The position numbers were made by a program, and so were the translations under genes. Below the pieces are notes generated by a model. The model searched no databases. It was not told the origin of the DNA and saw nothing but the letters and a program-made list of their open reading frames with translations. A stretch of 63,868 nucleotides of DNA, the filler included, from Octopus bimaculoides (taxonomy: Eukaryota): NCBI RefSeq assembly GCF_001194135.2. It is 8 parts of 5 records of this genome, joined end to end, with 100 filler letters (N's around TTAATTAATTAA, not from the genome) between each part and the next. Parts side by side here need not be neighbours in the genome. Positions count along the whole stretch, not along the records: positions 61,251 to 63,868 come from NC_068981.1; 7 more parts are not named here. One strand, given 5' to 3'. Every line of letters begins with the position of its first letter. Positions within the stretch are counted from its first letter, which is position 1. Below, piece by piece: positions 10,135 through 63,868 of the stretch.

Positions 10135-10799
10135 CACGCATTTTTTCTATATTGATTAAATTACATGACACAAGACAATTTTTGTTATTTCCATTATCTC
10201 ATGATTGTTTAAATTATGCAAATTAGCTAGACCGTGTATGTATTCGACTTGTTTTTGAAGGCCGAAGTCTCCTACCTACAAGAGTTAAGGTCGGAATGTT
10301 GTCGTGCTGATGACATTTATTGTGGTAGAAACACGTCTGTGAATGTTCTCTTATTTCCAGATTATAAACCTGCCTTTCTCCTTAACGGCATGCTAGCTTT
10401 GAAGGAATTCGTTAATCTTGAGATTATCTCTACTTCTCGATTGATGCTGGTCTCAATAAAATTTTGGTAATGTTGATACATCTTTTGGCGGGTGGGGGTG
10501 GGGGGATTATTTAAATAAGTGAAAACTTTATGTTGTATGGTATTTGATACACCTGTATTTGTCAATAGGATACAAATGAGGAATTACAGCAACAGGTAAC
10601 CTTGAAACCTAAGATCTGAGATTCCGAGATTGTCTTTCAAGGAACCGACCCTGTTTCTTTACTCTTTTTTCTGTTATGCACAGCAGCGGACGCTAGGGGT
10701 TGCTATTTGGCGAATAGGAAGTACGATGTATGGTATGGTAAGCAACAGAAACTACATCGGGTAAAGGCACTATACAGAGTGGACGGTAAAACGGTAGGA

Positions 10800-11340
10800 A
10801 GTGTGTGTATACATGCGCGTGTGTGAAATGTGTGTGTCTGTGTATAGTGTGTATGTGTGTGCTGTATCTGCTTGCGTTGCGTGTATAAGTGTGTGTGAGA
10901 GTTGCATGTGTGTGTGTGTGTGTTCGTCTGAGTGTTGTGTTGTGTATATGTATGTGTATGTGCGTAGGCGTGCTCTGTTGTGTTTGTGTCTTGTGTGTGT
11001 GTGTGTGAGTGCGTTGTATGTCTGTGTGTGTAGGTGAGTGTATGTGTGTGAGTATATGTGCGTGTATATATGTATGTGTGTGTAGGTGAGTGTATGTGTG
11101 TGAGTGAATGTGTGTGTGTGTGTGAGTGAATGTGTGTGTGAGTGACTGTGTGTGTGAGCGTGTGCGAGTGTGTGTGTATGTGTGTGAGTGTGTGTGAGTG
11201 TGTGTGCGTGCGTGAGTGTGTTGGTATGTCTGTGTGTACGTGTGTGTAGGTGAGTGTATGTGTGTGAGTATATATATGTGTGTGTGAGTGTGCGAGTGTG
11301 TGTGAGTGTGTGTGTGCGTGCGCATGCGTGTGTGTGTGGG
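10800..11340. repeat. Degenerate (GT)n-rich tract with a recurring higher-order unit
   Basis: The unit tgtgtgtaggtgagtgtatgtgtgtgagt recurs near 11027, 11077 and 11243. Confidence 0.85.
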
Positions 11341-61250: not shown

Positions 61251-61982
61251 ATATGCCCATAGAATAGCTCCTACGATATTTGCATAATTGACATACATAC
61301 TATGTTCCATGATATTTCCAGAACAAATCGATTTTGGGTGATAAACATTGCTTCCATTTTTATAGAGTTTACAGCAATAGTTCTCCGCTAATTCTCGATT
61401 TATACCCAATCTTCTGTAAGCTTTAAATGACTCAGGGCTGTTCTTCTTCATGTCCTGAGATAAATTTATTAGAAAACACATGTAACCAGATTCTCCTATT
61501 TTCAATGTATCGATAAATACAATTCTCTTCAATTCGCCGAAAATCAAATATATTAAATCATGTCTCTGAATATTTTGTTTTCCACAATTTATATCGATAT
61601 CAATCCTTGGAGTAGCAATGTAAGCTCCTAGTAAATTCAAAGAGCGCATTGAAAAATCATAATAGAAATTCTTATACGCAATCAAACCATCTGGTTCGTT
61701 TGGAATCCAGGTAAATTGTCTCGCGTTCGCAAAATAATCCATTCGTACAGGATTCAGAAGGTCATCTAGCTTTTTATCGGATAAATGGACTTCAAAATTG
61801 AAAACCTTTTTATCTGATCTTACTAAACGAGATAAAATCATATTGACGTCGGGAGAAATCTTAATTTCACAATTATTTCCAAGTTCCTTCGCTTCTGTGT
61901 TTAATGATATTAGAATGACAATAAAAGTAATCACAAGGAAAAGTGTACCGGTTGCTGTTATTGTCATCTGCATGGCAGCCAT
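61251..61982 (-). CDS. Uncharacterised secretory-pathway, probably membrane, protein (partial, 244 aa): signal peptide, Cys-containing ectodomain, start of a hydrophobic segment
   Basis: 732-nt open frame of complex sequence. Hydrophobic signal TLFLVITFIVILISL with T-E-A|K cleavage site; Cys 38/133/169/203/204/220; sequons N173-L-S and N209-G-S; ends IVGAILWAY at the gap; splice acceptor immediately upstream. Confidence 0.8.
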
Positions 61983-61992
61983 ATTTCGTTTT

Positions 61993-62010
61993 CTGTAAGA
62001 GAAAAATAAG
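61993..62010 (-). promoter_or_regulatory. 3' splice acceptor 10 nt upstream of the ATG
   Basis: Minus strand cttatttttctcttaCAG|aaaacgaaatATG. Confidence 0.65.
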
Positions 62011-62531
62011 ATATATAGAAGTCATAAAATAATGAAGATTCATTTTAGATTCGTTATTTTGTATATATTTGAAATAAAGAGTATTTACTTAAAGTAAATG
62101 AATGAAGAGCAGGAGAACTTGCAGGACGAACATAATAGAACAGTAGTTAAATAGCACATGATTTAAGACATTAATTCAAACGTCGAATGTGCTTGTTTTC
62201 AATTTATTACATTACCTGATGCAAACTTTACATAACGGAGTTATGGAAAATGTGCACACATATGTTTTTGCTTTATAAAGATAATTGGCATAAATGTGAA
62301 TATAATTGGCCTGACGTAAAGAGAAAAAGCAGATGACGGGCGCGTTTGTTGCAGTGGACAGCAAACACAATTTGCTTAATGTTAAATTGTAACAGCCGAT
62401 TCTATTCTGCATTTCTTTCTCGTTGTCTGTAGACAGAAATCAATGGAAGAGTGTGACTCGTAGATGAGAAAGTCAAAGAAAACAATGAAGAGACAATTTG
62501 TGTTCTGTCGAGGCGAACCCAAAACTAACAA

Positions 62532-62900
62532 CTAGATAAAGAGAATGAGAGAAGATTGATTGTAGAATTTGATTCTTTTCTCAAATCTGCGTATTCTCTG
62601 AGATTTTGCTTGAACTTTTTGTTTAAGTGTTTCATTCGCTGACATTAATTCTTCTCTTGTTGAGAGTCTATATTTTCTCACGATCTTCCTGCCTTTTCTT
62701 GGTCTCACACCATTTCCAGAGACTAGCTCAGTTAATATTAAATATCTCCCTTCACAATGATTCAATCTCAGTTTCAATACTCCTCCAGTTTTATTTTATT
62801 TTCGAGTTTGGTATTGTTGGCTTTTTGGGTACTAAACAGCGTCTTTCGATTACCTTAGCAACAGAGTAGATAAAATGTCTACTACTGCTAGCAGCGAACA
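62532..62900 (-). mobile_element. R4/Dong-like retrotransposon ORF N-terminal fragment
   Basis: ..ETLKQKVQAKSQRIRRFEKRIKFYNQ resembles the LKQxxxAKAxRIRRYxxRxxxYxQN motif upstream of the RT in R4-clade ORFs; stops upstream. Confidence 0.65.
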
Positions 62901-63109
62901 ACAGCAACAGTGACCTTGACCTTAAGAAAAATTAAGAAAGCACCGACTTACTCTGTTCTGTATTATTTGTGAATAGAGATGTTGTGTTCGACCAGAGAGA
63001 ATCTATTATTATCACTGTTATTATTATTTTTTTTCCACGTGCATTTGTTATTACATATTTCGGCTATTCAAGGAGAAAATAAGGGTAATTTTGTAGAAAT
63101 TAAAGTTGA

Positions 63110-63334
63110 CTTTTCCAGAGATGTTTTTTTGTTTGTCCAGTTAGAGAAAACAGTTGTATTTTTGCAATAAAAAGGATGCTTGTATTTTTGAATACTCAGG
63201 GAGAAAGGAAAGAAAAGACAAGAAGAGTCAAATTTTCACAGAGAGTTTTAAGATTCACCAAAGAGTGTCATTTGTATGTCCACACAGAAAAAAAGGGATG
63301 TTTACTTTTTCGAATACTCAGGGAGAGAGGAAAG
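63110..63334. repeat. Diverged tandem duplication, about 120-bp period
   Basis: aaaaaggatg..tttt(t/c)gaatactcagggaga(a/g)aggaaag at about 63170 and 63290. Confidence 0.75.
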
Positions 63335-63534
63335 GATGAGTATTCACAACAGTTGTGGATGTTATAGTTTTCTTCTTTTGTTTTCATGTGTGTACACTGA
63401 GCAATTACCATACACACATATTCATACACACACATACAATACACGTTTAATGTTCTTATATACCGTTAATAACACACAGACACACACATACACACACACA
63501 CAGATACACACACACATAGCTGTCTTTCTCACAG

Positions 63535-63680
63535 TTTCTATTCATCAAATTCACTCACGAGGTATTTGTCGACATGTGGTTACAGTAGAAAACACTTGAT
63601 CATGATGCCGTGCACTGGGACTGAACCGGAAACCTTGTGATTGCAAATGAGATTCTTAACCACACAGCCATACTTGTACC
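63535..63680 (-). mobile_element. SINE family B 5' head
   Basis: Minus strand tggctgtgtggttaagaatc..ccggttcagtcccagtgcacggca..aagtgttttctactgta..gtgagtgaatttga. Confidence 0.75.
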
Positions 63681-63868
63681 TAACCAATGTTTTTCCATAA
63701 AACTCACTTCAGTTCCACCAGTTTTGCAGTCTTTGGACTGAGCCATAAGCACTGCCTTAACTTAGTTATTAAAGAAAATACGGCCCATCGTTTATACAAA
63801 AACATAAAAATTCTTAAAATATTTATTGAACATTGTATGAATGTTTATAAAATAAAACAAAGTCATAT

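What the first reader, a model, noticed from the sequence alone, without database searches (positions are those of the whole stretch)
61251..61982. Orphan-looking cell-surface protein: signal peptide, 200-aa six-cysteine ectodomain, then a hydrophobic segment
Seen: the only convincing host exon, at least 742 nt with no intron, a cleavable signal, two N-glycosylation sequons, a YCC-x15-C cluster just before a hydrophobic stretch, and distinctive motifs FTWIP and YDFSMRSLNLLG. I recognise no named domain. Inference: a receptor-, channel- or adhesion-like protein from an uncharacterised, possibly mollusc-expanded family; the number of TM segments is unknown because the ORF is cut. This is the best candidate for novel biology in the window.
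Basis: partly seen in the sequence, partly recalled or inferred. Interest (0 to 1): 0.7.

Follow-up and report, generated by a model that had tools for sequence, protein, structure and literature searches.

The report
Unnamed nine-helix membrane protein family
The ORF is the first third of an intronless Octopus bimaculoides gene from an unnamed family of about 730-860-residue surface membrane proteins found in molluscs and a brachiopod, which resembles no characterised protein in sequence or predicted fold and whose function is unknown.

Summary
On the minus strand (61982 down to 61251) lie 244 stop-free codons: a signal-peptide-like start, an ectodomain of about 195 aa with six cysteines (including YCC-x15-C), two sequons, and the start of a membrane helix. 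The frame is cut by a scaffold gap of the O. bimaculoides assembly, not by an intron.

It is not an orphan. Octopus paralogues are single-exon ORFs of 731-747 aa. An exhaustive profile search finds 128 clusters, in cephalopods, bivalves, a gastropod and the brachiopod Lingula, all labelled uncharacterised. All six cysteines and the FTWIP tryptophan are conserved family-wide.

AlphaFold models (pLDDT 80-83) plus family hydropathy and loop charge give an alpha/beta ectodomain and nine membrane helices, N-terminus outside, with an invariant Glu in helix 4. Pfam, PDB sequence profiles and Foldseek (PDB, viral) find nothing significant.

The only database name, an automatic "STRA6", fails four tests. 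A Cys-loop channel reading is also rejected.

The family is tandemly clustered, evolves fast (dN/dS 0.3-0.45) and sheds pseudogenes in sister species. Whether the window copy is intact cannot be told. The proposed function, a ligand-sensing or ligand-uptake surface protein, is inference only.

The parts
61251..61982 (-). Codons 1-244 of a single-exon gene (NCBI LOC128249435, O. bimaculoides chr CM046601.1). The C-terminal side is cut by a scaffold gap.
   Evidence: The piece equals L001:8115-10732 in reverse complement. It is 93% and 89% identical to the intact paralogues P0011 and P0012.
61890..61982 (-). Predicted cleavable signal peptide (codons 1-31: hydrophobic core 7-25, then TEA|K).
   Evidence: Hydropathy. 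An N-terminal hydrophobic segment is conserved across the family. It is modelled as a low-confidence helix detached from the fold. Cleavage is inferred, not tested.
61299..61889 (-). Ectodomain (codons 32-228): alpha/beta fold with six conserved cysteines, W92 of FTWIP, and sequons N173 and N209.
   Evidence: Model of the window's own sequence: pLDDT 82.7, pTM 0.74. Cysteines invariant or at least 90% conserved in 40- and 22-member alignments. No PDB fold match, best E = 0.12.
61323..61379 (-). Y202-C203-C204-x15-C220 cluster. YxCC and C220 are family-wide signatures just before membrane helix 1.
   Evidence: C203 and C204 are invariant in both alignments. C220 is invariant in A3 and at least 90% conserved in A7.
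61251..61298 (-). Start of membrane helix 1 (codons 229-244 of a helix spanning about 229-253 in paralogues).
   Evidence: AlphaFold helices 229-243 and 245-253 in P0012. Family-averaged hydrophobic segment 228-257.
61983..62104 (-). 122 nt directly upstream of the ATG, conserved among paralogues and orthologues. Probably the 5' UTR or core promoter of the duplicated unit.
   Evidence: blastn 88-93% identity to the corresponding upstream sequence in L003-L006, with similarity ending at about 62104. The function is inferred.

Best explanation
SHOWN. The ORF is the 5' third of an intronless gene. The gene belongs to an unnamed, lophotrochozoan-restricted family of about 730-860-residue membrane proteins. 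The visible part encodes a signal-peptide-like leader, an alpha/beta ectodomain of about 195 residues carrying six family-conserved cysteines (including a YxCC pair), and the first membrane helix.

SHOWN FOR PARALOGUES, INFERRED FOR THIS COPY. Full-length relatives continue as one open frame into nine membrane helices, with the N-terminus outside and the C-terminus inside. There is an 86-residue basic cytosolic helical insert between helices 3 and 4, a conserved beta-hairpin after helix 7, and an invariant glutamate (E490) toward the outer end of helix 4, next to a conserved YYGxP turn.

SHOWN. The family sits in loose same-strand clusters on one chromosome. It evolves quickly and loses copies to pseudogenisation.

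INFERRED, LOW CONFIDENCE. The likely mechanism is a cell-surface, environment- or ligand-facing protein. The disulphide-locked, glycosylated ectodomain would bind an extracellular molecule. The nine-helix bundle, using the buried Glu, would pass a signal, an ion or the ligand itself across the membrane. That would make it a lineage-specific receptor, channel or uptake protein, evolving like chemosensory or immune receptor families.

UNDETERMINED. Whether this particular copy is intact is unknown, because about 1.2-1.35 kb of its middle lies in a scaffold gap.
For: - Identity and family: (Octopus and Argonauta paralogues of 731-747 aa); 128 clusters at E <= 1e-3, 104 at E <= 1e-10, mostly aligned end to end.
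- Taxa: (Mytilus, Ostrea, Mercenaria, Mactra, Potamilus, Sinanodonta, Haliotis, Lingula).
- Single-exon CDS: L002 has a 731-aa ORF. P0012 and P0013 each occupy 2,205 contiguous nt. Oyster has 2,376 nt and Lingula 2,343 nt.
- The gene's C-terminal tail and stop are visible after the gap, at L001:11958-12074.
- Conserved Cys6, W92, E490 and prolines.
- Architecture: AlphaFold models with pLDDT 80.3 / pTM 0.77 and pLDDT 82.7 / pTM 0.74. Family-averaged hydropathy and K+R distribution are consistent with 9 TM, N-out/C-in.
- No known relative: sequence; fold.
- Constraint: dN/dS is 0.34-0.45 for the window copy against its nearest relatives, and 0.30 (ectodomain) and 0.43 (membrane part) for an intact ortholog pair.
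- Birth-and-death evolution: a nonsense codon in the O. sinensis ortholog and three indels in an O. vulgaris copy.
- Clustering: about 130 kb from P0012 on the same strand.
Against: - There is no functional, expression or localisation data for any member.
- Topology and fold are predictions.
- The 49-residue hydrophobic helix 6 could be two spans, which would change the helix count.
- The fold search covered only solved structures and viral models, not AlphaFold DB. No profile-profile search against all of Pfam was possible, so a remote link to a known superfamily is not excluded.
- dN/dS of 0.3-0.45 is only moderate constraint.
- The closest relatives in two sister species are broken, so this copy may also be non-functional.
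- NCBI models this locus as a 314-aa protein, not a full-length one.
Confidence: 0.55

Rival explanations
1. This copy is a pseudogene or truncated relic. The visible 244 codons are a still-open remnant and no functional full-length protein is made from this locus.
For: - The O. sinensis ortholog carries TCA->TAA at codon 111 at both loci that encode it.
- The most similar O. vulgaris copy has +4, +1 and -14 nt indels.
- NCBI could only build a 314-aa model, whose second exon has no family similarity.
- If the N-run length were exact, the C-terminal tail would be out of frame and 119 nt too close.
Against: - The N-run is a native scaffold gap of estimated size, so frame and length cannot be compared across it.
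- Both visible ends (244 + 39 codons) are free of lesions and end at a family-typical stop.
- The window has the intact TCA at codon 111.
- Its dN/dS (0.34-0.45) equals that of intact paralogues.
- The odd NCBI model is expected when a predictor cannot cross a gap.
Confidence: 0.35
2. The family is a very remote branch of STRA6 / STRA6-like retinol-uptake receptors, as the automatic UniRef name of two paralogues says. On this reading it takes up a lipophilic ligand from a carrier protein.
For: - UniRef names P0016 and P0017 'Receptor for retinol uptake STRA6'.
- 5sy1_A appears in the Foldseek list with the highest TMq and one of the longest alignments (rank 10, 592 columns).
Against: - Pfam RBP_receptor matches 0 of 86 members, the window ORF and the full-length L002 ORF.
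- Family profiles find no PDB sequence, although 5SY1 is in the set.
- hhalign of the family against zebrafish plus human STRA6 gives probability 0.3%.
- The Foldseek hit is noise: E = 4.2, probability 0.04, TM 0.14/0.16.
- In the STRA6 sequences used, the first hydrophobic stretch starts about 50 residues in, so there is no signal peptide or large Cys-rich ectodomain (alignment).
- STRA6 is reported absent from the annelid Platynereis (PMC5821490).
Confidence: 0.08
3. The short NCBI isoform is real. The locus would make a 314-aa secreted or single-pass protein, consisting of the ectodomain spliced at 'NYANI|GT' to a downstream exon. It could act as a soluble decoy of the family ectodomain.
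For: The RefSeq model P0001 exists, and a GT dinucleotide stands at the proposed donor.
Against: - Exon 2 (L001:13987-14220) has no similarity to any family member.
- The open frame continues through the 'donor' into a conserved membrane helix.
- All well-assembled relatives are single-exon.
- A comparable annotated intron in O. vulgaris (P0004) is contradicted by an uninterrupted 731-aa frame.
Confidence: 0.05
4. It is a divergent Cys-loop (pentameric ligand-gated) channel subunit, such as an octopus chemotactile-receptor-like gene. This was my own first guess, from the signal peptide, the ~200-aa ectodomain, and YxCC before a membrane helix.
For: Only the superficial layout, plus a YxCC motif reminiscent of loop C of nicotinic alpha subunits (the resemblance is from memory).
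Against: - No Neur_chan Pfam hit at E <= 10.
- No pLGIC appears in PDB sequence or fold searches.
- The ectodomain is alpha/beta with long helices, not a beta-sandwich.
- No C-x13-C loop: C133 and C169 are 35 residues apart.
- Nine helices and about 730 aa, instead of four helices.
Confidence: 0.01

Closest known systems
STRA6 / RBP receptor family (Pfam PF14752; zebrafish structure 5SY1)
   Same: Polytopic protein of similar size (about 670 against about 730 aa). The family's predicted nine helices with the N-terminus outside match the topology I recall for STRA6. It is the only name any database attaches to family members (automatic UniRef name).
   Different: No detectable sequence, profile or fold similarity. 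The STRA6 sequences used have no signal peptide and no six-cysteine ectodomain of about 195 aa. The family's conserved motifs (YxCC, FGGP, LNPxFW, CExxLC-YYGxP) were not aligned to STRA6 by any method.
Cys-loop pentameric ligand-gated channels, including the nicotinic-receptor-like chemotactile receptors of octopus (recalled from the literature, not checked here)
   Same: Signal peptide, glycosylated ectodomain of about 200 aa, a YxCC motif shortly before the first membrane helix, and multi-copy lineage-specific expansion.
   Different: Different ectodomain fold class (alpha/beta, not beta-sandwich). No C-x13-C loop. Nine helices, not four. No Pfam, PDB or Foldseek match.
General class of 'luminal/extracellular domain plus multi-helix body' proteins with solved structures (for example SID-1 family, GOLD-domain seven-helix proteins, Wntless)
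   Same: Overall layout only: a leader, one folded extracytoplasmic domain, then a helical bundle.
   Different: None of them, nor any other solved chain, is recovered by the family profile or by Foldseek with either model. They were not compared individually.

Membership tests
Unnamed lophotrochozoan Cys6-ectodomain / nine-helix family (defined here by alignment A3) | N-terminal signal-type hydrophobic leader | tested here: met
   Residues 7-25, with TEA|K following. The leader is conserved family-wide.
Unnamed lophotrochozoan Cys6-ectodomain / nine-helix family (defined here by alignment A3) | Six conserved ectodomain cysteines including YxCC, plus the xWxW(T/I) tryptophan | tested here: met
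   C38, C133, C169, C203, C204, C220 and W92 are all present in the window protein. They are invariant or at least 90% conserved in A3 and A7.
Unnamed lophotrochozoan Cys6-ectodomain / nine-helix family (defined here by alignment A3) | Significant full-length sequence similarity to members | tested here: met
   89-93% identity to intact paralogues over all 244 visible residues. The C-terminal tail after the gap is about 79% identical to that of O. sinensis P0020.
Unnamed lophotrochozoan Cys6-ectodomain / nine-helix family (defined here by alignment A3) | Uninterrupted single-exon ORF encoding all nine membrane helices | tested here: inconclusive
   Helices 1 (end) to 9 (start) fall in a scaffold gap of estimated size, L001:10733-11956. 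Only the two ends are visible, and both are intact.
STRA6 / RBP_receptor | Match to Pfam PF14752 or to STRA6 sequences | tested here: not met
   0 of 86 members plus the window ORF and the full-length L002 ORF match. Family profiles do not find 5SY1 at E <= 10. hhalign probability is 0.3%.
STRA6 / RBP_receptor | Fold similarity to the solved STRA6 structure | tested here: not met
   Foldseek against 5sy1_A: E = 4.2, probability 0.04, TM 0.14/0.16.
STRA6 / RBP_receptor | Nine membrane helices, N-terminus outside, C-terminus inside | tested here: met
   Prediction only, from the AlphaFold helices plus family hydropathy and K+R distribution. This feature is shared by unrelated families and does not define membership.
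STRA6 / RBP_receptor | Calmodulin-binding C-terminal helices; binding of RBP and retinol transport | not testable with these tools
   Needs biochemistry.
Cys-loop pentameric ligand-gated channels | Neurotransmitter-gated channel ligand-binding and membrane domains (Pfam), beta-sandwich ectodomain | tested here: not met
   No Pfam hit at E <= 10. The ectodomain is modelled as alpha/beta with six helices of at least 4 residues.
Cys-loop pentameric ligand-gated channels | Signature C-x13-C loop and four membrane helices | tested here: not met
   Cysteine spacings are 95, 36, 34, 1 and 16 residues. Paralogues have nine helices.
   No Pfam hit. Best BFVD fold match is E = 1.4. The intronless state is shared by oyster and Lingula genes, so it is ancestral and not a recent retrocopy. 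LINE fragments lie beside the gene, not within it.

The most novel reading that the evidence does not exclude
The family is a previously unrecognised class of animal surface receptor, channel or uptake protein with its own ectodomain and nine-helix folds. It would be restricted to lophotrochozoans and expanded by tandem duplication in bivalves and octopods, serving environment-facing sensing (chemosensory or immune recognition). The invariant intramembrane Glu would form part of a conduction or coupling site.
Probability: 0.2. Interest if true: 0.75.

Novelty: categorically new. Interest (0 to 1): 0.45.

Why it matters
The sequences are already in public databases, but only as 'uncharacterized protein'. 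No family, domain, structure or paper describes them.

If the architecture holds, this is a large lophotrochozoan-specific gene family of more than 100 clusters at 50% identity. It has a disulphide-locked ectodomain and a nine-helix body that no sequence or fold search available here could relate to anything characterised. The family is multi-copy and fast-evolving.

Such families are typical sources of lineage-specific sensory or immune biology, and octopus chemotactile receptors are a recent precedent. Defining the family also corrects several public annotations: false introns, chimeric models, models truncated by gaps, and an unsupported 'STRA6' name that could mislead studies of retinoid signalling in molluscs.

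The limits are clear. The function is unknown, the window holds only the first third of one copy, and that copy's integrity is undetermined.

Tried and rejected
1. Cys-loop channel / chemotactile-receptor hypothesis (note). Rejected by Pfam, fold class, cysteine spacing and helix count.

2. The 'orphan' reading. The word-indexed search returned only Octopus and Argonauta proteins. The exhaustive HMMER profile search then overturned the idea.

3. STRA6 membership. Four tests failed. The human STRA6 sequence used as bait was recalled from memory. It was used only to retrieve and accompany the deposited zebrafish sequence, which it matched at E = 2.6e-169.

4. My own interim claim that the window copy carries a frameshift (notes). 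I withdrew it after showing that the N-runs are native scaffold gaps of estimated size in this assembly.

5. Retrocopy origin of the intronless gene. Rejected because the oyster and Lingula genes are also single-exon.

6. Transcript evidence from recurring 3.7-kb oyster contigs. They are collinear with the genome and have no splice, so they do not prove transcription.

7. RNA or tRNA-SINE content upstream. There is no tRNA, only sub-threshold Rfam noise, and no copy of 63035-63868 in the other octopus loci.

8. Literature. No paper mentions the six LOC identifiers searched, and a STRA6/mollusc search gave only incidental mentions.

Full report
**1. The observation**

The piece (window 61251-63868) carries one long ORF, on the minus strand, from the ATG at 61980-61982 to the piece edge at 61251. 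It is 244 codons long with no stop. The next-longest ORF in the piece is 107 aa.

- A hydrophobic leader at residues 7-25, followed by TEA|K.
- Six cysteines: 38, 133, 169, 203, 204, 220.
- Y202-C-C-x15-C220.
- Sequons at N173 and N209.
- FTWIP at residues 90-94 and YDFSMRSLNLLG at residues 108-119.
- A hydrophobic segment that begins near residue 229 and is cut at the edge.

The real coding length in the piece is 732 nt, not 742.

**2. Source and why the frame is cut**

The protein is 100% identical to the N-terminus of O. bimaculoides LOC128249435 (P0001, E = 3e-155). The locus fetched around it (L001, chr CM046601.1) contains the piece as L001:8115-10732 in reverse complement. Directly beyond the edge stands a run of 1,224 N.

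I first took this run for a mask of true length. After it, in a different frame and 119 nt closer than collinearity with paralogues predicts, lies the family's C-terminal tail, LIPKFLSIINTNRRLTIPMLDKVIETINVYHGDVYQAI, followed by a stop. From that I inferred a frameshift.

That inference is withdrawn. An unrelated locus from the same assembly (L006) is also full of irregular N-runs of 133-4,267 nt. Loci from the four other assemblies have essentially none: only 1- and 9-nt runs in the Lingula locus. The N-runs are therefore scaffold gaps of estimated size. The piece is the contig between two gaps, and frames cannot be compared across a gap.

What can be said is that both visible ends of the gene (244 + 39 codons) are lesion-free and the gene ends at a family-typical stop. 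The 314-aa RefSeq model joins 'NYANI' to an exon 3.2 kb downstream that has no family similarity. It is most simply an artefact of predicting across the gap.

**3. The full-length gene**

Gene models of the first eight hits agree for about 220 residues and then diverge wildly. In O. vulgaris (L002) the frame runs uninterrupted for 731 codons and contains both 'exons' of the annotated 389-aa model in one frame, so the annotated intron is spurious.

A search with that ORF found full-length proteins of 731-747 aa in O. sinensis, O. bimaculoides and Argonauta hians. P0012 and P0013 each occupy 2,205 contiguous nt of genome.

The window protein is 93% identical to P0011 and 89% to P0012. P0012 lies about 130 kb away on the same strand of the same chromosome. 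The O. vulgaris and O. sinensis copies likewise lie on one chromosome each.

**4. Breadth of the family**

The word-indexed searches saw only octopods. The exhaustive HMMER search with the family profile found 128 clusters at 50% identity with E <= 1e-3, of which 104 had E <= 1e-10. Most are 750-860 aa and align nearly end to end, ectodomain included.

Named members come from:
- Bivalves: Mytilus, Ostrea, Mercenaria, Mactra, Potamilus, Sinanodonta.
- The gastropod Haliotis asinina.
- The brachiopod Lingula anatina.

All are labelled 'uncharacterized' or 'hypothetical'. In a 40-member alignment C169, C203, C204, C220, G362, P381, E490, P501, Y604 and P646 are invariant, and C38, W92, C133 and others are at least 90% conserved (ectodomain-only alignment).

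The coding sequence is also a single uninterrupted stretch in oyster (2,376 nt) and Lingula (2,343 nt). Intronlessness is thus ancestral and not a sign of retrocopying.

**5. Architecture**

AlphaFold2 on P0012 with the 40-sequence alignment gave mean pLDDT 80.3 and pTM 0.77. The window's own 244 residues, with a 22-sequence ectodomain alignment, gave pLDDT 82.7 and pTM 0.74.

The ectodomain (about residues 38-225) is alpha/beta. The remainder is helical, with hydrophobic helices at about 229-253, 297-325, 363-379, 466-499, 501-523, 527-575, 577-601, 647-674 and 681-701. There is a helical insert at 384-462 and a beta-hairpin at 623-633.

Family-averaged hydropathy reproduces these segments. 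The K+R excess falls in the loops predicted to be cytosolic: 380-465 has 11.5 K+R against 5.5 D+E, and 602-646 and the C-terminus are also basic. This fits nine helices with the N-terminus out and the C-terminus in. Helix 6 is 49 residues long and could be two spans, which is the main uncertainty in the count.

**6. Comparison with known families**

Sequence searches found nothing:
- Pfam: no hit for the window ORF, for the 731-aa ORF, or for 86 further members.
- PDB sequences: nothing significant with single sequences or with family profiles.

Fold searches found nothing significant:
- Full model against 350,542 PDB chains: best E = 1.3.
- Ectodomain against PDB: best E = 0.12, TM <= 0.17.
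- Full model against viral models: best E = 1.4.

The only name in any source is an automatic UniRef 'Receptor for retinol uptake STRA6' on two paralogues. I tested it four ways:
- Pfam's STRA6 model matches none of the members.
- Family profiles do not find 5SY1, although it is in the set.
- hhalign of the family against zebrafish STRA6 plus human STRA6 gives probability 0.3%. The human sequence was recalled from memory and matched 5SY1 at E = 2.6e-169.
- Foldseek lists 5sy1_A only at E = 4.2, probability 0.04.

STRA6 membership is therefore not supported. The shared nine-helix N-out/C-in topology is not diagnostic. My own first idea, a Cys-loop channel, fails on every defining feature.

**7. 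Evolutionary behaviour**

dN/dS over the ectodomain-coding part is 0.25-0.56 in all pairs, and 0.34-0.45 for the window copy against its nearest relatives. In the intact pair P0012/P0013 it is 0.30 for the ectodomain and 0.43 for the membrane part. That is purifying but relaxed, so the family is fast-evolving.

The window copy's 5' part is closer to same-species paralogues (dS 0.139 to P0012) than to the sister-species copy that shares its distinctive tail (dS 0.176). This suggests gene conversion among paralogues, which is an inference.

Real lesions occur in relatives:
- The O. sinensis ortholog has TCA->TAA at codon 111 at both loci that carry it.
- An O. vulgaris copy has a 4-nt tandem duplication, a 1-nt insertion and a 14-nt deletion.

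This is birth-and-death evolution of a clustered multigene family.

**8. Surroundings in the piece**

The 122 nt upstream of the ATG (61983-62104) are 88-93% identical among paralogues and orthologues, and similarity then stops. A LINE fragment occupies about 62556-63034. (AC)n-type microsatellites lie at 63409-63516. No tRNA and no significant Rfam family were found.

**9. Mechanism, verdict and limits**

Shown:
- Family membership.
- Conserved Cys6 ectodomain.
- Single-exon structure.
- Wide lophotrochozoan distribution.
- Absence of any detectable known relative.
- Clustering and turnover.

Predicted:
- Signal cleavage and glycosylation.
- Alpha/beta ectodomain fold.
- Nine-helix N-out topology.

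Inferred with low confidence: a surface protein whose ectodomain binds an extracellular ligand, and whose helical bundle transmits a signal or conducts an ion or the ligand, with the invariant Glu toward the outer end of helix 4 taking part.

Unknown:
- Expression.
- Ligand.
- Oligomeric state.
- Whether this copy is intact.

I rate the family as lying outside every characterised kind that I could test. Overall interest is moderate, for three reasons: lineage-restricted 'dark' membrane families are not rare, no function is in hand, and AlphaFold-DB and HHpred-level searches remain to be done.

Noticed in passing
window 62556-63034 (includes the 81-aa ORF 62532-62777, minus strand): A fragment of a LINE-type retrotransposon lies about 570 nt upstream of the gene. 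It is 74-78% identical to the ORF1-like region of a full LINE next to the O. vulgaris paralogue (L002:15134-16818), and it shares the peptide motif ETLKQKVQAK.QRIRRFEKR.
   Followed up: partly
window 63409-63516: Two adjacent microsatellites: (CATACACACACATA)n at 63409-63444 and (AC)n with 22.5 copies at 63472-63516. They also produce sub-threshold Rfam noise (mir-297, SCARNA7).
   Followed up: no
window 63590-63700: By eye this stretch looked like a tRNA-derived SINE. ARAGORN finds no tRNA, Rfam finds nothing, and no copy occurs in the other octopus loci held, so it remains unidentified.
   Followed up: partly
L002:10001-12196 (O. vulgaris OX597814.1): The annotated 389-aa protein P0004 removes a 1-kb 'intron' (10694-11701) that is in fact open and in frame. 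The real product is a 731-aa single-exon protein.
   Followed up: yes
L003:6001-8193 (O. vulgaris OX597814.1): The locus annotated as the 278-aa protein P0002 is a pseudogene of the family. It has a 4-nt tandem duplication (ATGGATGG), a 1-nt insertion and a 14-nt deletion.
   Followed up: yes
L004 and L005 (O. sinensis CM016859.1, 213.37 Mb and 205.01 Mb): Two loci 8.4 Mb apart encode the identical 569-aa model P0020 and share the same upstream TAA at family codon 111. This is either a recent segmental duplication of an already broken gene or an assembly duplication.
   Followed up: partly
P0006 and P0008 (O. vulgaris gene models): Both contain 'KYGC(H/R)ADDNN', which is the start region of a family gene (ATGGCTGCCATGCAGATG...) read one base out of frame. 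These are chimeric models that fuse neighbouring or partial copies.
   Followed up: partly
L001:13987-14220: The second exon of RefSeq model LOC128249435 (78 aa, TFSKVAFGSRSQ...) has no similarity to any family member. It is probably an artefact of prediction across the scaffold gap.
   Followed up: partly
P0016, P0017 (UniRef entries for O. bimaculoides): The automatic name 'Receptor for retinol uptake STRA6' is not supported by Pfam, HMMER, hhalign or Foldseek. An Aplysia transcript carries the same label in a published table (PMC8195618), but I did not check whether it belongs to this family.
   Followed up: yes
L008, L010, L011 against L009 (Ostrea edulis): At least 10 independent sequencing runs give near-identical 3.7-kb contigs. 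Three of these were aligned. They share the same 5' end, are collinear with the genome, and have about 690 nt before and about 680 nt after the ORF. This is compatible with an unspliced mRNA but not proof of transcription.
   Followed up: partly
P0024-P0027 (Octopus models; P0027 is 1,010 aa with gelsolin domains): Several models match only about 36% of the family protein at 62-66% identity. One is fused to gelsolin-repeat domains. These are likely partial copies or mis-fused gene models on other chromosomes.
   Followed up: no
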